From: Dimorphilus gyrociliatus
Taxonomy: Eukaryota; Animalia; Annelida
NCBI GenBank assembly: GCA_904063045.1
Contig: CAJFCJ010000014.1
Location: 124,001-188,000 of the forward strand
Direction of reading: 5' to 3'
DNA length: 64,000 nt
The notes beneath the pieces were generated by a model. The model was not told the origin of the DNA. It ran no database searches and saw nothing but the letters and a program-made list of their open reading frames with translations. Shown here piece by piece: positions 39,334 through 53,553 of this stretch. Made by a program: the position numbers and the translations under genes. Each line of letters opens with the position of its first letter. Within the stretch, counting starts at the first letter, position 1.

Positions 39334-40083
39334 ATGACAACAGTAGCATCAAATACAACTTCGTATCTAGAAACCTTCTCCTCTTTTGATAGTTTCTTAG
39401 CTCATCAGCGACCAATAGTTCCGTTAGTTCAAAAATTCGGTACCCCAATATGGTATATAATCGGATTTGTTGGTAATACTTTAGCCTTTCGGCTGTGGAT
39501 TAAGAGAAACATGAGAAATTCGTCGGGCTTCTATTTAGCCGCTTTAGCTATGTCAGATCTCATATTTTTACTTATGAATTTGCTGTTTGAACTTCAAAAT
39601 ACGTGGCAAGTAAACGTGCTGTATCAACCTGGAATTTGTCAATCTTTTCCGGTAATATATATGGCTATACAGTACCTTTGCCCTCTATTGGTCTTGGCTT
39701 TTACAGTTGAAAGATACATTTCAATTTGCCATCCCTTTAAAAGTGAGGTATTTTGTACAATGAGCAGAGCTGTTAAAGTGACGATTGGCCTGTCTCTTTT
39801 AACTCTGGCCCTTCATGCTGTTCAAGGCGAGTACTTGTAGAGTCTGATTGAACATTTCTCATGAAATATATAGCACATGAGTAGAGCAATAGAGATAAAG
39901 AGATGCTTATATATTTTAGTCTATTACCAATAGGTGACGCTACCAAAGAGAAATCGTCATTATTAGTTTTATATATATATATATATATATAATTAATTAA
40001 AAAAGGAAAAAGCTTAGCTAAGGGATTTTTCCTGTATGTTTTCGTTTAAAATAGAAATGCTTTAAGATTGAATGGCTAAGGTA

Positions 40084-40135
<52 letters not shown>

Positions 40136-40830
40136 AAGAGATTGAATGAGAGCAAGAACCTATTTTAATAATCTATTTTTGGATTCGAAATATAGGTTAT
40201 TTTTGGACGTTTGACGCAAAAAACAGGGAATGTACTCTGAGGAGAAGTGCTATTGCTGGGGATCCTTCATTATGGTCGGTTTATACTTGGTGTACGGAAT
40301 TGATTGTTTTTGCCCTAGTTCCCGTAGTTATACTCGTACTAAATGTATTGGTTATTAGGGAAGTTAGGAAAATATCAAAGTCAGAGGAAAAACGCCTATT
40401 TAAACATACGACAAAATCCAAAGGAGGAAGTAAAACATCTGCTACAACCGTCACTTTATTAGCCGTCTCTTTCTATCTAATTGTAACCACACTTCCAGTG
40501 ACGATATTCTATTCGATGGGACATTCGTTCGAAAAGGGCGATCTGAGTCTATCGGAAGAAGAGATAGAAGAAGACAAAACCTGGCAGAGATACTTAACAT
40601 TTTGGACAATTAGGATATTCGTTCAGCAATGGGGAATGTCTCATTACGCTTGTAATTTTTTCATTTATCTTCTAACTGGTAAAAAATTTAGAGATGAACT
40701 AAAGAAACTTCTGTGTAAGAGGATGCCGTGGAAAAATGACGATTATAATAGAAGCGTCATGTTTAGTGCCCTACCCCAAACAGAACTTAAAAACGGTACG
40801 TCAGGTCAAGGTCTGACTAGTTCTGTATGA
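39334..40830 (+). CDS. Class A (rhodopsin-like) peptide-type GPCR, FMRFamide/sex-peptide-receptor-like group, 2 exons (39334-39826, 40196-40830), 375 aa
   Basis: TM1 GFVGNTLA, TM2 YLAALAMSDL, TM3 FTVERYISICHP, TM5 LVPVVILVLN, TM7 NFFIYLLTGKKFR. The exons join in frame only through a GC donor at 39827 and the AG at 40194-40195. Confidence 0.9.
40084..40140. repeat. Compound (GT)n(GA)n microsatellite in the GPCR intron
   Basis: Direct tandem units. Confidence 0.85.
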
Positions 40831-41153: not shown

Positions 41154-43044
41154 CTAGCAAAAACTGGATATCGTCTTTCTTCGTTCTTTAATAAACAAAT
41201 TAAACTCATCATCTTCACTCGTTACTCTTTCCAGAATATAACCCTTATCATTACTGTTAATCTCTTCAAAAAGTTGAAAAACCCTTCTTTTAAAATTTAT
41301 ACTTATCAAACTGCAATTGAAATTTCTACTGCAATATTTAAAAGTATTTAAAAGTGACGTAAACTTAATCTCTTCCTTATTAATTAGCCTCTTTCTTTTC
41401 ACAAGTACGAATATTTCGCGATTATCTTTCGAGCTATTTGATGATTTAACTAGATTATTTATATTCTGAAGATTTCTTTGTGGAGATGAGGTAAAAGTGG
41501 CCACTGTAGTTGTAGGCGAAACTGCCAATCTTGGAGGATAAAAGCTGTAGATAAGGTTAAATAGTCATTAATAGCAATTCTTTTTATAAATATCAATGGG
41601 AAAAGGCATGAAGGGGGGCGGGGAGAGAGAGTGAGGGAGGAAAAAACGGACAGAGTAACGGTAGTTTAGCTTAGGCTAAACAAGTGCGAATAGGTGGGAG
41701 TATAGTGTAAATAAATCGAGTAATGTATATAATTACCTAGTGATTAAGGGGGCGGAGGTTGACAAAGAGAAGGGATCGCCAAAGTAATAGGAATATAATT
41801 CAATTTCTCTTATGAAAAGCTTATGAGTTTGTTTATTTAAGACGGAAATTTGTAAAGCTCTTCCTTGACAAGGTAAATAATTCCAATAAGAAATGTACCA
41901 ACAACTTCTAATGCTAATGAAGCAACTTGTCACATTTTCGTCAGCACCTCTTAATCGAATTTCAACTTGACTGTTTTCTAAAGAGCAAAGAATTGTTATT
42001 CAATTATTTAATGGATGATAAAGGAAAGATAAGAGGATGTGGTTTGTTGTCGGTGGGAAGAAGGGTGGAGAAGGGAAGAAATAGGAAAGTGAAGAGAAAC
42101 AAGAAAAATCAGTATCTTTTTTTAGAGTGTAAGGTCTTATGCATGGGATATAGTTTGACAAGAGTATTTCTTTTTTATTTGGTATTTGTTACCTCTAGGA
42201 AGAAATCTCATTCTAATGATATTTATTAGAAATTCTTTTCTTAGTTGAATAGAAAACTTTCTTAGACCGTCCAAAGGAAAACTATTATACATTTTTCCAT
42301 CTATTAACTGACTAGCCAATCCTTTTCCGCCGTATGCTTTACCTCCCCTGGCTAAATTCTTGGAAATACCGTCCGAAATTAGACCTACTGATTCTTCCAA
42401 AGTCGCTACTAAAACCTTATTACCACTAATAAAACTTTTGACAGCTAGAGAACCGCCATGTATTCCGGTTGGGACGCTAGTCGACTGTTCTAGCTCTTTA
42501 ACTGCCTCTATAGACGTTCCTGTACGATATATATAATTTTTCAACAAAAGTAAAAGTCATCTTATGCGTTCCATTCGAAAAATGATACTAGACAGAGTGT
42601 ATGAAGTACTTAATAGTGAATTTACCCGAAGGCGAAGACAATATGATAGCTAAACATCCTTTCTCTTGGTAGGAATTCAATAATCTATAACAGGTCTTGA
42701 AATAAATTAAGGTCGGAAGTCGAAAGATGATTATCTTTCCCCGAACAGATTCGAGATCAGGTTTATTCATACTACGGCAATTATCTTTAATATATTCAAT
42801 GATAACTTCACCTTTTATCTTTAAAGAAGAGAAATTAATGAATATTTGAATCTTGAAAGAAAACGACAATTATTATTCCAAATACCTTTAGCCAAGAATT
42901 AAAATAAGAAGGAAATGTGCGTATGGAATATCGAATCATTTCCGGTAGAAAATGAACATAAAACTCTCCACTATCAAGAGTTAAGGAAGGAGAAATAAGT
43001 AGTATGGAAACAATTAGGAGACGGCAGGTTAGATTCCTTTCCAT
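41154..43044 (-). CDS. Putative secreted mosaic protein (436 aa): signal peptide, PA-like domain, F5/8C/F-type-lectin-like domain, S/T linker, PAN/apple-like domain
   Basis: Five exons (43044-42886, 42818-42626, 42519-42193, 41977-41737, 41544-41154) with canonical GT-AG junctions join into one 1311-nt open frame. The N-terminus is hydrophobic (LLIVSILLISPSLT). Domain calls are by motif pattern only. Confidence 0.75.
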
Positions 43045-44024
43045 TTCTTTCTTTCTTTCTTTCTTTCTTTCTTGCTTTCTTTCTTCTCTTTGTTTTATTC
43101 CATTTGGAGATGTAAAGGGAGAGAAACCTTTCTTTCACATTTCATTGTGTCTGGGTATTAATCATATAATTCAAATTATGATTATCATTATAATTACCAT
43201 TTTCCCTCGTCTTGAATTTATTATTCTTTGTTCTTTTCTTTCAAATTAGATAAATCAATTCATATGCAAAATCAATGTATTCCACTTTTCAATAACTTTT
43301 TAAATAGCTCTTTCCTCTCTTTTCATTCCCTTCTCTCTTCTGCCTAAAGTTAAACGGCAAGGAGGAGATACGTCGACTCTTCCCCTTCTTCCTTGTATTG
43401 TCCCGTGTCTGATCTTTACTCCTCCATCAGTAGTACAGGCCTGTTAATCTAATGTGCACACTTACAACGCGTATTTGTTTATAGACCATCTTTATTTTAT
43501 AGGTTTTTCTCTTAAGAAAATCTTTCAAGCATGAATAATCACTTTTTATTAATGATTTTCATTTTTCCTTCTTAACCTAGATTCATTATTTATTTTGTAA
43601 AATGATAACATCACTTTTTTTTCCCGCCAAAAAAAAAATAAATCAATTGTGCCTGTCTGTCTGTCTATCCTTCGTTCTTTTTCCCCTTCTCTCTCTCTTC
43701 GTGTCCTCTTCTACTCATTTCCCACTACTCTTTCTTGTTGTATTATTCTCTTTCAATATTATCGTTATAGGCCTAAATTTCCCCCTCGTTTTTTCCACGA
43801 AAAAGGAGTTTTGTATAGGCTGGTTTCCTGTTTCATATATACGTCTTTTTTTTTTTTCTCAGAATAGTTTTTATACAAAAACTAATGATTTATTCGAAAA
43901 AGAAAGTGATTTCATAGGAATTAAGATAAGTGACACTAGTTGGATTATGTCATATTATGATCAATATCTAGGAATTTAATATTATACTCGAAGTGAATTT
44001 CGCACGGTTCTTTTTATTCGCGTA

Positions 44025-46498
44025 ATGACTTTATACCAACTTGGTTATAAAGACTATAACGATTACGTAGAAACGTTGGATAATTTAACAGGTAAATAAA
44101 AATGGTTAGATATTTGTAAAATATTTGAATAAAGCGAATATTTTTAATAGAAAGCATTAAAGCGAACTTAGAAGGAAGAAACGATGATGACTGGAAAGAA
44201 TTTGATAATGGAATCGTTAAGTTTATGAAAGAAAACAAAATACCAGGAATATCATTAACAATTGGACGAAATGGAAATATTATCCATGAACAGAGTAAGA
44301 CAAAATTGACAAATAGAGTAATCTTATGACTTTGCATAATCGGTATTGTTTCTCTTTATTCTTCTTGACCAGCTTACGGTTTTGCTAATAGAAGAGAAAA
44401 AGTCAACAAGTCAAATCTATTCAGAATTGCTAGCGTAAGTAAGATGCTAACTTCAATTGGAATTTTAAGAATTATTCAAAATGGTGGTCAATTGAAATTT
44501 CATCAAAAAGTCTTTGGCCGAAACGGTTGGTTGGGAATAAAAGAAAATATCTTCATTCATTGAATCATTCATTGTAAACTTTGTTTACTGTTTAATTATC
44601 ATATTAGGCATCCTATCTTCCTATTCCCCTACTGAAAGTGGCGATAAACGCCTACTGAACATAACTGTTCGACACCTTTTACAGCATAGTGGCGGTTGGG
44701 ATAGAGAGATAGCGGGCGATCCAGTCTTTTATAAGAATGTTGGTAAGAATATGAAAGTTGATGAGCCAGTTTCGGCCCAAGTATTAATATCTTATATGAT
44801 GGGTCAGAAATTACAGTTTAAACCAGGTAATCTAATGAGGTTTATATAGTGTATTCACACTCTCTTTGTACGTAGTAAAAACAATAAACAATTTCCTCTC
44901 TTTCCCTCTGTGAATAGGCTCAATTAATTGAACGCCTTTAAGCTTATAATCTACCTATTCACCAGTTCATCTTCTCCTTTTTAGGTAGTAAATATTGCTA
45001 TTCAAATTTTGGTTACGTCATTCTTGGAAGAATAATTGAAAAAATCAAAGGCGTCTCTTATGAAGAGTATATTAAATCTTTTCTTACCGATATTGGCGTA
45101 GATGATATGAGAATTGGAAAAACCCAATATTGCCATAGACTTATTGAAGAAGTAGAATATTTTGTAAACCCTCTAATGGGACCTATATTAGGAAAAAGCC
45201 TATTCAGCACAGACGAAGAGGAAGATGATGGAAGCCAAGTTCTATTACCATACGGATCGTTTTGTCTAGAGAGTGGAGATTCGGATGGAGGTTGGCTAGC
45301 TACTTCAAAGTCTGTTGTAAAATTGCTAATGAGTCTGAGCAAAGGGGAAGGTGAAGGTTGTTTATTAAATAAGAAATTAACAAATGAAATGATGAAGAAA
45401 CCAAGATATAAGAATAACAAACAATCAACTTGTTGGTACGGATTGGGCGTTGATGTTATAGGCTTCGATAAGTTATCTTTCGAACATACAGGACATTTGG
45501 ATGGTTCTACTTCTATCGCTTTAAGAAACGATAAGGGATATTGTTGCGCTCTTCTCTCCAACTACTGGCCGTTTGAAAGCGACTATTCAGGCTTACTATC
45601 AAATCTATTAAATAGAATCGAAGATTGTAGTTTGTACAGTATTCCTAATATTTTTGGCGAGTTTAAAGAGTCAATTTCGTTCTATTCGGAAAGATTCATG
45701 TTGTGTTTGAACGTTGAATTAAAGAACTTGAAGGAATTCAACAATTTTTGTAGATATAACTTGAATATGGGACCGTCTACAATTTGCTGTTGTACAGTTA
45801 AAGGCGTTATCTATTGTTACGGATTCTGGGTAAAAGATTCTAAAAACGAGCTATTAGTGTGTTCAAAGGAACTTGTCGTAGAGGAAATTAACAGGATAAA
45901 AACTGCTAACCTTCGCCTCATTTACGTCTATTTCGTACGAAATATTGATGTGTATTTATTAGTATTCGGTCAAGGTCAACCGAATACTACGCACTACCAA
46001 CTCGAATCCGACGAAGCGGACTTGGAAAGGATTCTGTCAACACCCGACGTACGAGTTGTATCGCTTACATTTAATAAGGAGCGCTATTGCGTTGTTTACG
46101 AAAAGGATGAGGAGGAAAGGGACAAGGAAGGCGGAAAGTCTACTAGACTGGAAAAGAAGAAATCCTATAGACAATACGTAGAAGTGAATAAAGAAGAAGA
46201 GTATGATAAAAAATTTAATATGCACTCAAGGTACGGAAGAATGCTGTCCTTTCTCTTCTTTTCCGAAACAGGCGATAAAATAGCATCTGTGTGGAACGAT
46301 AGCGGATCATTCTATTTCTCGGCCGAGAGGGAAATGTCCAAATACCAACTAATAACCGATTGCGGTTATCTTTACCGGAAAGGTTATAATCCTCTCTCCG
46401 TGACGTCATACATCAAGGACAATTGCCTGAAGTTTGCTTCGGTGTTTTATAAAACACCGCAAAAGAGGAAACTGACGACAAGAACGTTTAAAAAATAG
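44025..46498 (+). CDS. Beta-lactamase/DD-peptidase family serine hydrolase (698 aa) with C-terminal degenerate polyglycine-hydrolase-like (BTRD1-type) tandem repeats
   Basis: Five exons (44025-44091, 44151-44294, 44373-44525, 44608-44826, 44985-46498) in phase, 2097 nt. Motifs KIPGISL, FRIASVSK (SxxK), LLQHSGG, YCYSNFGYVILG (YxN), FEHTG. The C-terminus has GYNPLSVTSYIKDNCLKFASVFYK-type repeats. Confidence 0.88.
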
Positions 46499-47402
46499 TT
46501 GTTTATGGTAAAATGTCTAAGCAAAACTTGACCAATAGTTAATTATTACAACCACAAAGTATACGTTGGGTTGTTTTCTTAATTCTTATACTCGATAGAT
46601 GTCGTTAGTTGGTAATAAACTGTGCGCTTTTTTTGTTTTTTTGTATAGGCGTAGGATAGGTTGATTCCTGGTACCGTATCCGTTCAGTAATATGAATCGT
46701 TTGACCACAATTTAAAACAGATAAGAATTGTATTCAGATCCAAATTGAAGTAGAACACGATCTAGCAAACAAAGTTGAGGAAGATAAAAGGGATAAAGTG
46801 AGAAGTAAGGAGGCGAGGACAAGAAAGAAACCTAGTAGTCGGTAGTGCGTTGAATGTCAACACAAAAATACAACTATATACCAATATAGGTGATATAGGT
46901 ATATGTAGATAATTAGAGTCGGTCGGATAGCTAGATAGCGAGGTAGAAGAGGAAAAGGAAGAAGACAATTGTATATAATAACGTTGATATTTATGATTAT
47001 ATTTAAGTATCTATTGATACAAAGAAATTTCTGGATGCTAATTTAAATAATGAAGAGAAAGAGTTTTAAAATACTATGTTCAATTCTATGCATCATTTTA
47101 CTCATTGGATCAATAATAGCGATATTATACTACTTGTTTTTCCATAAGAATAAGCAAGAATATAAAAGTAAGTAGAAAATTTCCTATTGCACTTAATGGA
47201 TAAATATTCTTTAATTGTTTTAATCATATAACAAGCAAACAAACAAACAAACACATTTTTGTCAGGTTTGAATTTGTATTGCTGAATATATTCGTGCTTT
47301 TAAAGGCGATAACACTGTTTCAGATAGATAGGTTGATAGAGAGACAGAGACAGACAAACAGAGAAACAGAAGCAAATATATTCAGACTTTGAACCTAACA
47401 GT

Positions 47403-49229
47403 ATGGCAATATTACAATATAATATATACAATACATATGTACTAAGCCTATGTTTATATATCCATTTTGTTACAAACAATGGCAAAGGAATCTTTTTAAT
47501 GAGAAAACTTTGTGTGCTTTGTTCTATAGGACCAACTATTTTGAAGCCACCTGTCGGATTGATATGGAATTCTAAATGTATGGTTAAAAATCCAGAATCG
47601 TCTTCGGAAATTATGAAAATTGTCGATAGTAAATTACCGTGGGATTATTTCCCTTTCAACTTATTTATTTTCCATTTTGATAATGGCAAAGATTGTTGGC
47701 CAAATTCCAAAGAGAACGTCACTATTTCAAAAGTACGTTATAAAACTAATAAGTACGGAGTCTATATATCAAATATTTGCAATATAACATCCAAAGAATT
47801 GAGTACTGTTAGTAAGAAGATGTTGAAGAAACTTGAATACATCAGATTTGGCTATCAGACGCAAGTTTGCGGTGAAAAATTCGACGACGATTTCATTAGA
47901 AGTTTAAAGGACGGATCATCAACAAGCGTAAAGAACATTCTACATTTTCCCTATAAATTCAACATAGGAGAGGCAAAATTAACTGCAGATATACTAACTA
48001 TATCTCCACCTTTTATAAAGGAATACGTATCTGCAATAGTCGATAATTATCTATTAGATTATAAAGGGATCTTCCGTTCCGGATTCTTTCCCTACGCAAC
48101 TTCGCTAGAATTGAATAACCAATTCCAATTCGTTATGTATTGCCTAATGAAATCTCCTATTTTCGTAGATTATACCCTACATAATTTCTATTCAAAGAAA
48201 ACTATACAAACATTTTCCCAAGAGATTCTAAACAAACATAAATCGTTAATCGACTTTCATCAAAGTGAAAAAACATGGCCGATTTCCTTAAAAGTTTGTA
48301 ATAGACATAAAAGTTTCTCATTTCACTTTTTTCATCTCTATTTTTGTAAATTGAATATTCAAACGAAAATCAAAAACTACTTTTATGTCTATTATTTATC
48401 ATTGAAAACAAAAGGCGGGATCCTATATCAAAGATAAGAAATCTCATTCTAGACGCTTTCAAGTTTTCTCAAAACCCAACAGCAACGCTGGCGTTGACAA
48501 TGGAATACAAAGTTTTTGGAGATCTCAACGTCTTCAGCAGAATTCCAATGAATTTCGTTTGATATTCACCAACTCATCGGATAAAGATAGTTGGCTGTCT
48601 CTGTGTCTAACTGCCCGCGGACAGACGTTAAGGATTAAAGAATGCGATAATTCGTAAGTAAATCTATTTGAATACTGGATAAAAGATTTGCAGTTTGATT
48701 GTTATGTAATAGGGCAAAAGGAGGGCAAGGCGAACAAAGTCAAACGTTCATTTATTCAAAGAAAACCAAACAACTTATGAATAAAAAGTCGAAAAGTTAC
48801 GTTTGCCTACCGAATTATCCATATTCACCTGTAAGATTCGAGTCGATAGCTCAGCAAGATTGTTCGCTTCGTATTCAGATGAAATTGAACAAAAACGGCA
48901 ATTATCTATTGCACAATGACCATAATTTATACATGGGCGTTGGTCTATACGACCTGTACGAAGTTTATACAAGGATTGACGCCACCCAACACCTTTACGC
49001 CTTTATAAACTTTCATCCGTCCAATTCGGAAACGAGAGACTTGTCTGCAAAAACGATAAGAGGACTGCATCAATTATATAATTATAACTTTAAATGTACG
49101 GATTCATCAAGATCGCCGACCACTAAGGAGTTTCTAATCGGTGACAAAATCAAGATAGAGGCGAAAACAGTTCACTATTGTTTTATAAAGGAACTTGCGG
49201 AAGATTACGATCAATATGAATATGCATGA
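47403..49229 (+). CDS. GH27 (alpha-galactosidase/NAGA)-like pseudo-enzyme with a C-terminal ricin-B-like beta-trefoil (~532-548 aa)
   Basis: Exons 47403-48293, 48415-48653 and 48713-49229 join in frame (possible extra in-frame GC-AG intron 47482-47529). Ordered GH27-like motifs: NNG..PPVG..W, KDCW, KYGVY, EYIRFG, TADI, FVMYCLMKSPIF, LIDFHQ, FQVFSKP. These are followed by CLTARGQTLRIKECD...QTFIY...QLMNKKS..VCL. Confidence 0.72.
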
Positions 49230-49780: not shown

Positions 49781-50893
49781 ATGGCTTTTAATTCGACGAG
49801 ACGAAACTTTACCTTACCAAAGTTTGACTGGGAAGCTTGGTTTGAAAAGTATGTACCCAAGTTCCATCACGCAAAAACGATGGTAATAATTGTTTCAACC
49901 GTCTGTTTGTCACTATTAATAATTGGATTCTTTGGAAATATCATTAGTTGTATAATCTTTAGTAAAAAGAGTTTAAACCGTTCAACAACTTCGGTATTCC
50001 TACGTTTCTTGGCAATAATCGATTCAATTTGTTTACTGTTCAACTGCGTTCTATGGAAAATAAGATTGTTTATGGGTTTTTTCAATCTTTCTGATAAAAC
50101 TATTCAAATGTTCATATGCGCATTCACCTATCACGGATCGTTCGCCTTTAATCAACAGAGTTCGTGGATAATTGTAGCCATGACCGTTGATAGGAGTGTT
50201 CATATTTTCTTTCCGACAAAGGCGCAAGTTTTATGTACGAAATTCAGAGCGTTCATGTTCTGTTCCTTTATCATAGTGGTAACTTTAGTATTCTATCATC
50301 CTTACTATTATCTGTATAAGGAGGGAGCGTATATCTCCATAGACCCAAAGGATAAATATTCGATTGTAATGAGTTGTAATACGATCTCCGAGTCGGCTTC
50401 CTATTACTTGAAAGATATACTGTTCCCCTTGGATAGTATCATGTATTCAGTCGTACCATCGGTTATACTGATAGTTATAAATATATTAATGATTCGTCAC
50501 GTCTACAAGTCGACGAGGAGAAGAAAAGAGATGACTCAAGGAAAAACTGACAAGGCAACGAGTAAGAAAACACTGCAAATGACTATAACCCTTATGTGTA
50601 TAAGTTTCTATTTTTTCCTAACTACATTTCCAATATCCTTGAACGTTCTTATATTCCATTTTAGAAGAACTACGACTCTAAGGGAATATATCAAGTATTT
50701 ATCTTATACAAGATACTTTAACCTTTTCGCCTATACTAATAATGCGGCTAATTTCTTTATATACTGCCTTTCCGGCTCAAAGTTCAGATCAGAATTTATA
50801 AAGTTATTTCGTAAGAAGGCGAAGGGAAGGGAAGGATCGAAAAGTCTGTCGACTTCGAATGGCTCGTCGTTTAAAGGCCAATCGCGTTATTGA
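49781..50893 (+). CDS. Intronless class A peptide-type orphan GPCR (370 aa)
   Basis: Single ORF with 7 hydrophobic segments: GFFGNIIS, FLRFLAIIDS, AMTVDRS (DRY variant), VVPSVILIVINI, FFLTTFP, NFFIYCLSGSKFR. Confidence 0.92.
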   Translation: MAFNSTRRNFTLPKFDWEAWFEKYVPKFHHAKTMVIIVSTVCLSLLIIGFFGNIISCIIFSKKSLNRSTTSVFLRFLAIIDSICLLFNCVLWKIRLFMGFFNLSDKTIQMFICAFTYHGSFAFNQQSSWIIVAMTVDRSVHIFFPTKAQVLCTKFRAFMFCSFIIVVTLVFYHPYYYLYKEGAYISIDPKDKYSIVMSCNTISESASYYLKDILFPLDSIMYSVVPSVILIVINILMIRHVYKSTRRRKEMTQGKTDKATSKKTLQMTITLMCISFYFFLTTFPISLNVLIFHFRRTTTLREYIKYLSYTRYFNLFAYTNNAANFFIYCLSGSKFRSEFIKLFRKKAKGREGSKSLSTSNGSSFKGQSRY

Positions 50894-52322: not shown

Positions 52323-53553
52323 CTAGAAGTAAAAATTAACAAGAGCTGAGAGACTGAAGCCGAATAGGACGCATAAAATTTTCATAAGGTCGTCATTATC
52401 ACCAATAGCCTTGTGTAAAATTTCAAAAAAGCTGACAAACAGAAAAGTTCCTGTTGAAAGTCCCTGAAGAACTGCGCTCACCAAATTTAAACTGGAACTT
52501 GGCTTTGCCTTATTTCCTAAAAAGGTAATTACTGTACCAACTGCTATACCAACTGGTGTCATAATAGAAAAAGCTGCTATTAGCGTTACTATCCTTCTAG
52601 TATCGTTTGAAAATTGCTTGGTGAACTGAACGCCTAATGAGAATATTATTATAGATTTATGTAATAGGATAGCTATAGTCAAACTCCACATTTGACCTTT
52701 TTTATTTTGAAGACCAACAGCCAAACCTTCAAAAATCATGTGTAAACTCAAGGCCAAAAGTAAAACAACAGCTCTCATCCCACTCTGCATCGAAGACGTA
52801 GAAGGTGAAGGAGGAGAAGAAGGAGGAGGGGAAGGAGGAGGGGGAGCAATAGGAGGGGAATGAGAAGGGTGATGATCATGACAATGATGATGGGCATAGG
52901 TTTGAGAATGAGGAGGATGAGAATTAGATAAAAGAGAGGAATTATGGTCGGATTGCTGTCCTTCAGCTAGGTTAACTTCAGTCCTTATCTCTGCTTTCAC
53001 ATTTTCATAAGAGGCCTAAAAAAAGTGAAAAATATGAAACACGTGCAATATTCAAAAGAGAACATCATATCAGTTAATAATCGATTAGTATCTATCGGTT
53101 AAAATTTGCTATTTTTGTATTACGTTGAATAAAATTACAGCGTACCTGACAATCCTTTAACAAAGGAGAATGCTCTCCACTTTCTGAGGGAAATAAATTT
53201 TTTGCAATTACCCATCTTCGTTGACAAACAACCGCTAAATTTTCAAGGATTAGCACTAGCAGAAAGCCAATAGCCGTTAAGAATTCAGCCAAAGGATAAT
53301 CAATTGTCAATCCATTAGCTTTTTCGAAGATGGCTAGTTGTTCATTAACTTCCGGTAAGAGGTGGAGAAGTAGCGTTCCTAAAAATATCCCACCAGCAAA
53401 GCAGTTTAAATAATCTATAATATTTTTAGAAGTTTCGTCTTTTATCCTTTTGTTCTTGAGCATAGTTAATGGTTTTAGGGGAAGAAGACCCATGACAAAC
53501 GATATAATAGAGATAAGTGAGAGGGAGAATATTTTTAGAATCCATAATTCCAT
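52323..53553 (-). CDS. ZIP (SLC39 subfamily II; ZIP1/2/3-like) zinc transporter, 2 coding exons (53553-53146, 53015-52323), 366 aa
   Basis: LNCFAGGIFLGTLLLHLLPE, His-rich loop HHHCHDHH, LALSLHMIFEGLAVG, AILLHK, SIMTPVGIAVG, LQGLSTGTFLFVSFFEIL. Phase-0 GT-AG intron. Confidence 0.93.

What the first reader, a model, noticed from the sequence alone, without database searches (positions are those of the whole stretch)
44025..46498. Intron-containing animal gene for a bacterial-type DD-peptidase/beta-lactamase with C-terminal polyglycine-hydrolase-like repeats (candidate HGT)
Seen: a complete catalytic set SVSK / YSN / HTG, the same triad pattern as Streptomyces R61 DD-peptidase, plus LLQHSGG. Four short in-phase GT-AG introns show it is genomically integrated rather than contamination. 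The C-terminal ~330 aa contain degenerate ~50-aa repeats (e.g. EMSKYQLITDCGYLYRKGYNPLSVTSYIKDNCLKFASVFYK) resembling the BTRD1/polyglycine-hydrolase structural repeat (PF17660). Established: in fungal polyglycine hydrolases these repeats precede the beta-lactamase domain, whereas here they follow it. No signal peptide is obvious. Inference: an active serine hydrolase, possibly of bacterial ancestry, acting on peptidoglycan peptides, Gly-rich proteins or beta-lactam-like compounds.
Basis: partly seen in the sequence, partly recalled or inferred. Interest (0 to 1): 0.75.

Follow-up and report, generated by a model that had tools for sequence, protein, structure and literature searches.

The report
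Old animal PGH-like serine hydrolase gene
This is a real, spliced and expressed worm gene for a penicillin-binding-type serine hydrolase joined to a five-repeat barrel domain, but corals, molluscs and a brachiopod share it with the same introns, so it is an old animal gene of unknown substrate and not a recent gift from bacteria.

Summary
A 5-exon, 698-codon gene lies on the + strand at 44025-46498. All four GT..AG introns are confirmed by spliced contigs. The product has a PF00144 catalytic domain with SVSK, YSN and HTG intact and no signal peptide. Its 291-residue C-terminal domain is a divergent BTRD1 domain. Pfam alone misses it (E 0.11). A full-library phmmer search links it to BTRD1 proteins (E down to 4e-9). 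An AlphaFold model (pLDDT 81) shows five E-H-E-E units and matches only the N-domain of the fungal polyglycine hydrolase, 7tpu (Z 18.9).

The window is from the annelid Dimorphilus gyrociliatus (public model DgyrCDS9683, which looks wrongly fused to the next gene). Proteins with the same domain order occur in Lingula, two corals and eight molluscs. On the catalytic domain alone the animal rows form one clade (bootstrap 99, SH-aLRT 97). Three Dimorphilus introns sit in the same column and phase as in Lingula and Pocillopora, and the fourth matches Lingula.

The nearest outgroups are bacterial, so an ancient bacterial origin stays open. The likely function is an intracellular S12 acyl-enzyme hydrolase that uses the barrel to dock its substrate. 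The scan had not noted this family on other DNA.

The parts
44025..44091 (+). Exon 1 (start codon ATG 44025-27; 22 codons + 1 nt)
   Evidence: An in-frame TAA lies at 43977-79. The start is kept in the relative L001. The junction is confirmed in X2 and X3.
44092..44150 (+). Intron 1, 59 nt, GT..AG, phase 1
   Evidence: Skipped in contigs of X2 and X3. Same phase and the same 48-codon spacing to intron 2 as Lingula intron 1.
44151..44294 (+). Exon 2
   Evidence: Identical to residues 23-71 of P0121.
44295..44372 (+). Intron 2, 78 nt, GT..AG, phase 1
   Evidence: Skipped in X2 and X3. Same alignment column and phase as in Lingula and Pocillopora.
44373..44525 (+). Exon 3, carries the nucleophile motif SVSK (44432-44443; Ser91, Lys94)
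   Evidence: PF00144 profile positions 39-71. SxSK is kept in all animal members.
44526..44607 (+). Intron 3, 82 nt, GT..AG, phase 1
   Evidence: Skipped in X2. Same column and phase in Lingula and Pocillopora.
44608..44826 (+). Exon 4, carries LLQHSGGW (44676-44699)
   Evidence: PF00144 profile positions 82-138. The motif is kept across animals.
44827..44984 (+). Intron 4, 158 nt, GT..AG, phase 1
   Evidence: Skipped in X2. Same column and phase in Lingula and Pocillopora. Absent in the relative L001.
44985..46498 (+). Exon 5: the rest of the catalytic domain (YSN 44999-45007; HTG 45485-45493), the whole C-terminal barrel, and stop TAG 46496-98
   Evidence: Contigs of X2 and X3 run unspliced through to 46700.
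44025..45622 (+). Catalytic S12 / class-C beta-lactamase-fold domain (residues 1-407, introns included in this span)
   Evidence: PF00144 E 8e-39 on P0121. AF2 model with pLDDT 89.9 and pTM 0.91. Foldseek: 2qmi 6e-21, R61 1ikg 1e-18, 7tpu 2e-18.
45623..46495 (+). C-terminal BTRD1 / PGH-N-domain-type five-repeat barrel (residues 408-698)
   Evidence: phmmer hits to BTRD1 proteins, E 4e-9 to 4e-4. AF2 model with pLDDT 81.3. 7tpu_A is the only significant Foldseek hit, E 1.8e-5. VIA Z 18.9 over 232 residues against chain residues 13-279.
45695..45835 (+). Repeat 1 (E-H-E-E)
   Evidence: DSSP on the AF2 model: E25-32, H33-47, E49-59, E62-71 of the domain.
45848..45970 (+). Repeat 2 (E-H-E-E)
   Evidence: E76-81, H82-94, E98-105, E110-116.
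45998..46102 (+). Repeat 3 (weakly modelled; the first strand is not resolved)
   Evidence: H132-138, E143-150, E153-160, with pLDDT about 60. It is followed by a charged linker that is expanded in the relative.
46172..46297 (+). Repeat 4 (E-H-E-E)
   Evidence: E184-190, H191-203, E207-213, E219-225. Repeats 4-5 are the best conserved part of the domain, with dN/dS 0.06.
46313..46453 (+).
   Evidence: E231-238, H240-252, E256-265, E268-277. PF17660 E 0.11.

Best explanation
This is the Dimorphilus gyrociliatus member of an uncharacterised family of two-domain enzymes that animals have inherited vertically. The family is present at least in Cnidaria, Mollusca, Brachiopoda and Annelida. Residues 1-407 are a serine hydrolase of the S12 / class-C beta-lactamase fold. 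Residues 408-698 are a five-repeat E-H-E-E barrel of the BTRD1 kind. Both domains have their closest characterised structural counterpart in fungal polyglycine hydrolases, but the order is reversed and no secretion signal is present.

Inferred mechanism:
- Ser91 (SVSK) attacks a carbonyl and forms an acyl-enzyme.
- Lys94 and Tyr200 (YSN) act as the base and proton shuttle.
- His362-Thr-Gly lines the strand that borders the active site.
- The barrel docks or positions the substrate, as has been proposed for the polyglycine hydrolases.
- Most likely the enzyme works inside the cell on a peptide or protein amide bond. I put this at about 0.55. An ester substrate gets about 0.2 and beta-lactams under 0.05.

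Shown here: the gene model, splicing, presence in transcript assemblies, both folds, intact motifs, purifying selection, the animal clade and the shared introns. Inferred: catalysis, location, the role of the barrel and the substrate class.
For: - Gene and expression: all four introns are removed in contigs of X2, and two of them in X3.
- Identity: P0121 = DgyrCDS9683 of Dimorphilus gyrociliatus. Its residues 1-672 equal the exon model.
- Catalytic domain: PF00144 E 8e-39. AF2 pLDDT 89.9. Best PDB relatives by sequence are Pab87 2qmi (1e-21) and the PGH 7tpu C-domain (7e-20), ahead of LACTB (6e-10) and R61 (3e-9). Foldseek agrees.
- Barrel: one search gave 12 hits. They are the gene's own public model P0121, the relative P0001 and ten further proteins. 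The nine of those ten that were scanned all carry Pfam BTRD1 above cut-off; P0131 was not scanned. 15 of 19 aligned homologues match BTRD1. The AF2 model shows five EHEE units. 7tpu is the only significant Foldseek hit. VIA gives Z 18.9 on PGH N-domain residues 13-279, with the next hit at Z 6.7.
- Family range: the same architecture occurs in Lingula, Pocillopora, Montipora and eight molluscs.
- Tree: the animal clade gets UFBoot 99 / SH-aLRT 97 on catalytic columns only, with Dimorphilus inside it (quick tree).
- Introns: introns 2-4 lie in the same column and phase as in Lingula and Pocillopora, and intron 1 matches Lingula.
- Conservation: SxSK, YxN, H[TS]G and LLQHSxGW are kept in every animal member, and no N-terminus has a signal peptide.
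- Selection: dN/dS against the relative L001 is about 0.12 overall and 0.06 in repeats 4-5.
- Context: rhodopsin-type GPCR and ZIP transporter genes flank the gene.
Against: - No biochemical datum exists for any animal member, so the substrate class is a guess from relatives.
- Absence of a signal peptide was judged by eye, not with a predictor.
- Within the animal clade the branching does not follow the species tree: corals group with molluscs and the Dimorphilus pair is on a long branch. Support there is weak (94/67, 89/71).
- Repeats 1-3 of the Dimorphilus barrel have drifted far from the BTRD1 consensus, and repeat 3 is modelled at pLDDT about 60.
- The family was not seen in vertebrates, arthropods or nematodes. 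The word search scored only 8000 candidates, so absence is not shown.
- X2 is of unknown library kind, so transcription rests on the spliced form of its contigs. One 226-nt contig in a marine metatranscriptome also matches the gene at about 98% identity.
Confidence: 0.8

Rival explanations
1. Recent horizontal transfer: a bacterial DD-peptidase / beta-lactamase gene entered the Dimorphilus (dinophilid) lineage and later gained introns.
For: In the first word search every hit except one close relative was bacterial or metagenomic, at 30-39% identity over the catalytic half. PF00144 is mainly a bacterial family.
Against: That picture came from the word-based search. Using the Lingula homologue as query brought up full-length coral, mollusc and brachiopod proteins. 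Dimorphilus nests inside an all-animal clade (99/97). Three introns share column and phase with a brachiopod and a coral. The relative L001 keeps introns 1-3.
Confidence: 0.03
2. Ancient horizontal transfer: the whole animal family descends from one bacterial gene (perhaps already a beta-lactamase-BTRD1 fusion) taken up before the cnidarian-bilaterian split, and has been inherited vertically since. This concerns origin only and is compatible with the best explanation.
For: The animal clade sits among bacterial sequences, with bacterial or unidentified rows as its nearest neighbours. Human LACTB is far more distant than archaeal Pab87 or the fungal PGH. Bacteria carry beta-lactamase and BTRD1 in both orders: P0150, P0040 and P0055 have BTRD1 first, and P0130 has the beta-lactamase domain first in a clearly bacterial neighbourhood. 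Only a patchy animal range has been seen so far. Peitsaro et al. 2008 (PMC2266909) argue for bacterial ancestry of other metazoan lineages of this superfamily.
Against: The tree is unrooted and has no fungal, protist, LACTBL1 or nematode sequences. Direction and timing therefore cannot be read from it. The same pattern would follow from descent from the early eukaryote with many losses. P0056, an unidentified eukaryote, branches at the base of the animal clade.
Confidence: 0.4
3. It is a working DD-peptidase or beta-lactamase acting on peptidoglycan peptides or beta-lactam compounds.
For: The motif set SxxK / YSN / HTG matches the Streptomyces R61 DD-peptidase (established knowledge). R61 complexes are among the best Foldseek matches (1ikg, 1e-18).
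Against: No signal peptide occurs in any animal member, so the protein would not meet a cell wall unless fragments reach the cytosol. Its closest characterised relative, the polyglycine hydrolase, shows no nitrocefin activity (PMC9912923). By sequence R61 (3e-9) is much further away than Pab87 or PGH.
Confidence: 0.1
4. It is a carboxylesterase or lipid hydrolase of the family VIII (EstB-like) kind and not a peptidase.
For: EstB, EstCE1, EH7 and family VIII esterases are all strong structural matches. EstB scores E 2.5e-9 by sequence. The same fold supports ester hydrolysis.
Against: The top matches by sequence and by structure are peptidases or amidases: Pab87, PGH, R61, dHy1, D-amino-acid amidase and ClbP. 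A protein-docking barrel suits a macromolecular substrate.
Confidence: 0.15
5. It is a decaying or non-catalytic copy in a fast-evolving, compacted genome.
For: The Dimorphilus branch is long. Repeats 1-3 fall below Pfam detection. Two ancestral introns were lost between the two dinophilid genomes.
Against: The frame is open and every catalytic motif is intact. dN/dS is about 0.12. Spliced contigs occur in two studies. Both domains are modelled confidently.
Confidence: 0.04

Closest known systems
Fungal polyglycine hydrolases / chitinase-modifying proteins (Fvan-cmp, PDB 7tpu; Bz-cmp, Es-cmp)
   Same: Both domains correspond. The catalytic domain is the second-best PDB match by sequence (E 7e-20) and scores 1.8e-18 by fold. 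The barrel matches only the 7tpu N-domain (Z 18.9). Both have five E-H-E-E repeats. Both carry SVSK and YSN (PMC9912923).
   Different: The domain order is reversed (hydrolase first, then barrel). There is no signal peptide, whereas PGHs are secreted. The third motif HTG is intact here but lacking in Fvan-cmp. The host is an animal and not a plant-pathogenic fungus, so the plant chitinase substrate is not relevant. No activity data exist.
Pab87 of Pyrococcus abyssi (PDB 2qmi), the 'CubicO' S12 peptidase group
   Same: It is the best PDB relative of the catalytic domain by sequence (1.2e-21) and by fold (6e-21). JGI names many of the bacterial homologues 'CubicO group peptidase'. It is intracellular.
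   Different: Pab87's C-terminal domain is not a BTRD1 barrel: 2qmi did not appear in the barrel's fold search. Whether the animal protein oligomerises is unknown.
Streptomyces R61 DD-peptidase (PDB 3pte, 1ikg)
   Same: Same fold and the same SxxK / YSN / HTG motif pattern (motif identity from established knowledge).
   Different: R61 is a secreted single-domain enzyme. Its sequence relation is distant (E about 3e-9).
LACTB / LACTBL1 and the four metazoan PBP-beta-lactamase lineages of Peitsaro et al. 2008 (PMC2266909)
   Same: These are metazoan active-site-serine proteins of the same superfamily with proposed bacterial ancestry. LACTB is a clear structural match.
   Different: LACTB is mitochondrial, forms filaments and has no BTRD1 domain. 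It is about ten orders of magnitude weaker by E-value than Pab87 or PGH. The 2008 survey included no mollusc, annelid, cnidarian or brachiopod. Whether this family equals one of its four lineages could not be tested here.
Bacterial beta-lactamase + BTRD1 fusions (P0040, P0055, P0150, P0130)
   Same: They have the same two Pfam domains. Their catalytic domains are 30-39% identical and are the nearest non-animal relatives in the trees.
   Different: Most have the barrel first. P0130 has a signal peptide, and P0002, a single-domain relative, also has one. They have no introns. P0130 sits among hydrogenase and PFOR genes.

Membership tests
Pfam PF00144 / MEROPS S12 (class-C beta-lactamase-fold serine hydrolases) | Significant match to the family profile over the whole domain | tested here: met
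   E 8.4e-39, 134 bits, profile 2-314 of 329 on P0121. The matches in exons 3-5 are collinear.
Pfam PF00144 / MEROPS S12 (class-C beta-lactamase-fold serine hydrolases) | Catalytic motifs SxxK, YxN and K/H-T/S-G present | tested here: met
   SVSK residues 91-94, YSN 200-202, HTG 362-364. All three are kept in all animal homologues.
Pfam PF00144 / MEROPS S12 (class-C beta-lactamase-fold serine hydrolases) | The fold | tested here: met
   AF2 pLDDT 89.9, pTM 0.91. 498 PDB matches at E <= 0.001, all of those listed from this superfamily.
Pfam PF00144 / MEROPS S12 (class-C beta-lactamase-fold serine hydrolases) | Serine-dependent hydrolytic activity | not testable with these tools
   Needs recombinant protein and an S91A control.
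Pfam PF17660 (BTRD1; polyglycine-hydrolase-like structural repeat) | Profile match above the gathering score | tested here: not met
   12.9 bits against a cut-off of 23, E 0.11, one repeat only. No match when the domain is scanned alone.
Pfam PF17660 (BTRD1; polyglycine-hydrolase-like structural repeat) | Homology to bona fide members through sequence search | tested here: met
   phmmer against 1.8 billion proteins gave ten hits beyond the gene's own model and its close relative. Nine were scanned with Pfam and all carry BTRD1 above cut-off. E ranges from 4e-9 to 4e-4. 15 of 19 aligned homologues match.
Pfam PF17660 (BTRD1; polyglycine-hydrolase-like structural repeat) | Five E-H-E-E units forming the PGH N-domain barrel | tested here: met
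   DSSP on the AF2 model. 7tpu_A E 1.8e-5, TM 0.63. Z 18.9 over 232 residues on chain 13-279. Repeat 3 is only weakly modelled.
Polyglycine hydrolases (fungal chitinase-modifying proteins) | Barrel N-terminal to the hydrolase domain | tested here: not met
   The order here is hydrolase (1-407) then barrel (408-698).
Polyglycine hydrolases (fungal chitinase-modifying proteins) | Secreted (signal peptide) | tested here: not met
   The N-terminus is acidic and hydrophilic here and in all animal homologues. This was judged by eye, without a predictor.
Polyglycine hydrolases (fungal chitinase-modifying proteins) | Third beta-lactamase motif (KTG) absent | tested here: not met
   HTG is present here. 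It is listed as n/a in Fvan-cmp (PMC9912923).
Polyglycine hydrolases (fungal chitinase-modifying proteins) | Cleaves Gly-Gly bonds in polyglycine linkers | not testable with these tools
   Needs an enzyme assay.
LACTB family sensu Peitsaro et al. 2008 (LACTB, LACTB-like 1, LACTB-like 2 / LACTBL1, esterase-like) | Groups with one of the four described metazoan lineages in a tree | not tested
   No tool returned LACTBL1, nematode or Dictyostelium sequences by reference. The only datum is that human LACTB is a weak sequence match (6e-10) compared with Pab87 or PGH.
Horizontally acquired gene, recent and lineage-specific | No orthologues in other animals; nests among bacteria | tested here: not met
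   Orthologues occur in corals, molluscs and a brachiopod. The animal clade has support 99/97. Introns are shared.

The most novel reading that the evidence does not exclude
Animals have an ancient intracellular counterpart of the fungal polyglycine hydrolases. It would be a cytosolic endopeptidase that uses the BTRD1 barrel as an exosite to cut unusual peptide bonds. Candidate substrates are Gly-rich linkers, or peptides that contain D-amino acids or derive from peptidoglycan. The family would be retained in marine invertebrate lineages (corals, molluscs, brachiopods, annelids) and lost elsewhere, which would give the barrel fold its first defined role outside plant pathology.
Probability: 0.15. 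Interest if true: 0.65.

Novelty: new variant of a known kind. Interest (0 to 1): 0.35.

Why it matters
The headline claim, a bacterial cell-wall enzyme gene recently captured by an animal, does not hold. This is a useful correction: a best-hits-are-bacterial picture disappeared once a less divergent homologue was used as the query.

What remains is an uncharacterised animal enzyme family that is conserved from corals to annelids and under purifying selection. Both of its domains match the fungal polyglycine hydrolases, but the order is permuted and it appears to stay inside the cell. The PGH N-domain barrel has no known function, and the authors of the crystal structure noted that it occurs in all kingdoms. 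An animal family in which the barrel's last two repeats are the most conserved part of the protein offers a second, independent system in which to ask what the barrel binds.

The work also flags a probably chimeric public gene model (DgyrCDS9683).

Tried and rejected
- Pfam and NCBIfam on the exon pieces confirmed the catalytic domain but gave only a sub-threshold BTRD1 hint.
- A PDB sequence search with exon 5 found nothing for the C-terminal half.
- The word search restricted to the C-terminal 299 aa found only the close relative P0001. BLASTP against P0056 gave collinear but non-significant repeat matches (E 0.13-0.46).
- These blanks justified the single full-library phmmer job on the C-terminal 291 aa, which settled homology.
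- I considered that P0056 and P0124-P0128 might name further animal phyla.
- The PGH paper's supplement held none of the animal taxon names I searched for (Metazoa, Mollusca, Crassostrea, Lingula, Eukaryota, Animalia). The parts of its top-50 Foldseek table that I saw listed fungi and bacteria.
- The relation to LACTBL1 could not be tested because no tool returned its sequence.
- I rejected contamination. The gene has spliceosomal introns, animal neighbours (GPCRs, ZIP transporter) and lies on a 2.2-Mb contig.
- I rejected the annotated 1105-aa fusion as the true product. Contigs run unspliced across the proposed donor, and the ORF's own last 26 residues form the conserved final strands of repeat 5.
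The 698-aa product was handled as exon references plus P0121:1-672.
Full report
**1. What is in the sequence**

The + strand between 44025 and 46498 carries a five-exon gene: 44025-44091, 44151-44294, 44373-44525, 44608-44826 and 44985-46498. The coding length is 2097 nt, which is 698 codons plus TAG. An in-frame TAA lies 16 codons upstream of the ATG. The four introns (59, 78, 82 and 158 nt) all begin GT, end AG and sit in phase 1.

When public runs were laid on 43900-46700, contigs of run X2 skipped all four introns at exactly these borders. Contigs of X3 skipped the first two. A 226-nt contig from a marine metatranscriptome also matched the gene at about 98% identity. X2's library kind is not on record and X3 is only guessed to be DNA. 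X3 also holds a contig that retains part of intron 4. The simplest reading is that both are transcript assemblies, so the gene is spliced and expressed.

The neighbouring genes are rhodopsin-type GPCRs and a ZIP zinc transporter.

**2. The catalytic domain**

PF00144 matches exons 3, 4 and 5 in profile order (39-71, 82-138, 141-314). The full-library search returned P0121. Its record is DgyrCDS9683 of the annelid Dimorphilus gyrociliatus, on a 2.2-Mb contig. Residues 1-672 of P0121 are identical to my exon model. I therefore used P0121 as the reference for the spliced protein and did not join the exons myself.

On P0121 PF00144 scores E 8.4e-39. An AlphaFold model of residues 1-410, built with a 36-sequence alignment, has pLDDT 89.9 and pTM 0.91.

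| PDB relative | By sequence | By fold |
|---|---|---|
| Pab87, 2qmi | 1.2e-21 | 6e-21 |
| PGH Fvan-cmp, 7tpu | 7.4e-20 (C-domain) | 1.8e-18 |
| Human LACTB | 6e-10 | 1.5e-16 |
| EstB | 2.5e-9 | 5.3e-16 |
| R61 DD-peptidase | 2.7e-9 | 1.4e-18 (1ikg) |

Foldseek then lists a run of D-stereospecific amidases, ClbP, esterases and class C enzymes.

**3. The C-terminal domain**

On its own sequence the Pfam BTRD1 match is below threshold: 12.9 bits against a cut-off of 23, E 0.11, last repeat only. The word search limited to this part found only one close relative. Because the family scans and the word search left the domain open, I used the one full-library phmmer job on the 291 residues encoded by 45623-46495.

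That search gave 12 hits. Two are the gene's own public model P0121 and the close relative P0001. The other ten have E from 4e-9 to 4e-4. Nine of the ten were scanned with Pfam and all carry BTRD1 above cut-off; P0131 was not scanned. Most of them have BTRD1 placed after a beta-lactamase domain. In a 19-sequence alignment of this domain, 15 members match BTRD1.

An AlphaFold model built on that alignment has pLDDT 81.3 and pTM 0.79. It shows five strand-helix-strand-strand units, with the third weakly modelled. The crystal-structure paper describes the N-domain of the polyglycine hydrolase Fvan-cmp as five E-H-E-E repeats of 44 residues that form a barrel (PMC9912923).

Foldseek against the PDB found one significant match, 7tpu_A (E 1.8e-5, probability 1.0, TM 0.63); everything else had E above 0.05. 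VIA-align gave Z 18.9, rmsd 4.5 Å and 232 aligned residues, model 23-291 on chain 13-279, which is the PGH N-domain. The next hit had Z 6.7.

**4. Is it a horizontal transfer?**

The first word search suggested so. Apart from one 59%-identical relative (P0001, a 26%-GC Logan contig), every hit was bacterial or metagenomic. One of the phmmer hits was a Lingula anatina protein of the same architecture (P0127). Using it as the query brought up full-length homologues from these animals:

- Corals: Pocillopora meandrina, Montipora foliosa.
- Molluscs: Potamilus, Sinanodonta, Liolophura, Octopus, Gigantopelta, Aplysia, Candidula, Physella.

A maximum-likelihood tree was built on catalytic-domain columns only (52 rows, 386 columns, LG+C20+F+G4, careful search). 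All 15 animal or eukaryote-like rows fall in one clade with ultrafast bootstrap 99 and SH-aLRT 97. The Dimorphilus pair lies inside it, and every bacterial row lies outside. A first quick tree with 76 rows agrees.

I then mapped the exons of the Lingula and Pocillopora genes on their genomic loci.

| Species | Phase-1 introns (split codon) | Phase-0 intron (between codons) |
|---|---|---|
| Dimorphilus | 23, 71, 122, 195 | none |
| Lingula | 120, 168, 218, 291 | 346/347 |
| Pocillopora | 93, 143, 215 | 270/271 |

In a three-way alignment, Dimorphilus introns 2, 3 and 4 fall in the same column and the same phase as in both other species. Intron 1 matches Lingula's first intron in phase and in its 48-codon spacing to intron 2. 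The phase-0 intron before VEYF is shared by Lingula and Pocillopora and has been lost in Dimorphilus. The dinophilid relative L001 has also lost intron 4.

Shared introns between an annelid, a brachiopod and a coral mean that the gene, with its introns, was already present before cnidarians and bilaterians split.

The deep origin of the family remains open. Its nearest neighbours in the trees are bacterial or unidentified, and LACTB is far away. Bacteria carry the two domains in both orders: P0150, P0040 and P0055 have the barrel first, while P0130 has the hydrolase first and lies next to hydrogenase and PFOR genes. The trees are unrooted and lack fungal, protist and LACTBL1 sequences. An ancient transfer and ancient eukaryotic ancestry with losses therefore cannot be told apart.

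**5. How it most likely works**

- Every animal member keeps SxSK, YxN, H[TS]G and LLQHSxGW, and none has a hydrophobic N-terminus.
- Against the relative L001, dN/dS (NG86, with dS saturated near 2, so the ratios are rough) is about 0.12 over exon 5. It is 0.11 in the catalytic part, 0.23 in repeats 1-3 and 0.06 in repeats 4-5.
- The gene is thus constrained in all its parts, most strongly in the last two barrel repeats.

I infer an intracellular acyl-enzyme hydrolase. Ser91 is the nucleophile, and Lys94 and Tyr200 handle protons. HTG lines the strand that borders the site. The barrel docks the substrate, as proposed but not shown for polyglycine hydrolases.

The nearest characterised relatives are peptidases or amidases, several of them D-stereospecific, so a peptide or protein substrate is the best guess (about 0.55). 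An ester substrate is the main alternative. Beta-lactam hydrolysis is unlikely, because PGHs show no nitrocefin activity and this protein has no route to the outside. None of this is tested.

**6. Comparison with what is known**

The protein is a member of PF00144 / S12, with profile, motifs and fold all met. Its barrel is homologous to BTRD1 domains, although it fails the Pfam gathering score on its own sequence.

It resembles fungal polyglycine hydrolases in both domains but fails three of their defining features. The domain order is reversed, there is no secretion signal, and the third motif is intact where Fvan-cmp lacks it. I therefore do not file it as a polyglycine hydrolase.

It is not LACTB. 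The 2008 survey of metazoan members of this superfamily described four lineages but sampled no mollusc, annelid, cnidarian or brachiopod. I could not test whether this family is one of those lineages.

My literature searches (polyglycine hydrolase, PF17660, LACTBL1, LACTB-family evolution, and Dimorphilus with HGT) turned up no paper on the animal family. Public records call its members 'uncharacterized' or 'Beta-lactamase-related domain-containing protein'.

**7. Verdict**

The gene is an ordinary, vertically inherited member of an uncharacterised animal enzyme family. The recent-HGT claim is refuted. Interest is modest. It rests on the family itself, a permuted, apparently cytosolic animal relative of polyglycine hydrolases, and not on this particular copy.

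The scan's other notes on this stretch come from the same first reading. A different beta-lactamase-fold gene elsewhere in this genome was noted (s1-083900) but I did not examine it.

No full-length two-domain model was made.

Noticed in passing
window 46383-49229: The public gene model DgyrCDS9683 (P0121, 1105 aa) leaves this ORF after ...CGYLYRK (about 46383) and continues into the downstream gene (47403-49229, weak ricin-B match). This drops the conserved last two strands of repeat 5. Contigs of X2 and X3 run unspliced through 46383-46700. The model is probably a chimera of two genes.
   Followed up: partly
window 43093-44025 (approximate): X2 contig record 1 (1297 nt) carries exons 1-3 and runs about 800 nt upstream of 43900. 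This is either a long 5' UTR or an assembly overlap with the divergently oriented upstream gene (41154-43044, - strand).
   Followed up: no
L001:806-3479 (Logan contig of SRR23372229, GC 26%): This is the orthologue in a related, even more AT-rich genome. It is 59% identical over the aligned parts of exon 5 and has SVTK in place of SVSK. Introns 1-3 are kept and intron 4 is lost. Long low-complexity inserts (Ser/Asn-rich and Lys/Glu-rich) lie exactly in the linkers between barrel repeats 2/3 and 3/4.
   Followed up: partly
L002:1-3168 (JGI metagenome 3300036111): P0056 has the same hydrolase-then-barrel order, with four clear BTRD1 repeats. The ORF is open to the contig's 5' end and is followed by about 900 nt of AT-rich sequence without ORFs. 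It looks like a transcript of an unidentified eukaryote and branches at the base of the animal clade.
   Followed up: partly
P0122, P0131, L005:6001-8709: In bacteria BTRD1 repeats are joined to quite different partners. P0122 has a lysyl-oxidase domain plus ten near-identical repeats. P0131 (2115 aa) has a long helical-repeat region that I judged by eye to be TPR/CHAT-like, plus several repeat arrays. P0130 is a secreted beta-lactamase with a repeat-rich insert.
   Followed up: no
window 39334-40830 and 49781-50893 (+), 52323-53553 (-): Rhodopsin-type (Srw-like) GPCR genes lie on both sides of the three-gene stretch, and a two-exon ZIP zinc transporter lies further on. The ORFs at 47403-49229 and 41154-42547 gave no Pfam match at E <= 0.01.
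   Followed up: partly
L006 and L007 (P0124), ENA sample ERZ25072999 (P0125): Further unidentified eukaryotic genomes carry this gene. Their last exon begins at (V)EYF, the position of the phase-0 intron of Lingula and Pocillopora, and a separate upstream PF00144 exon is present.
   Followed up: no
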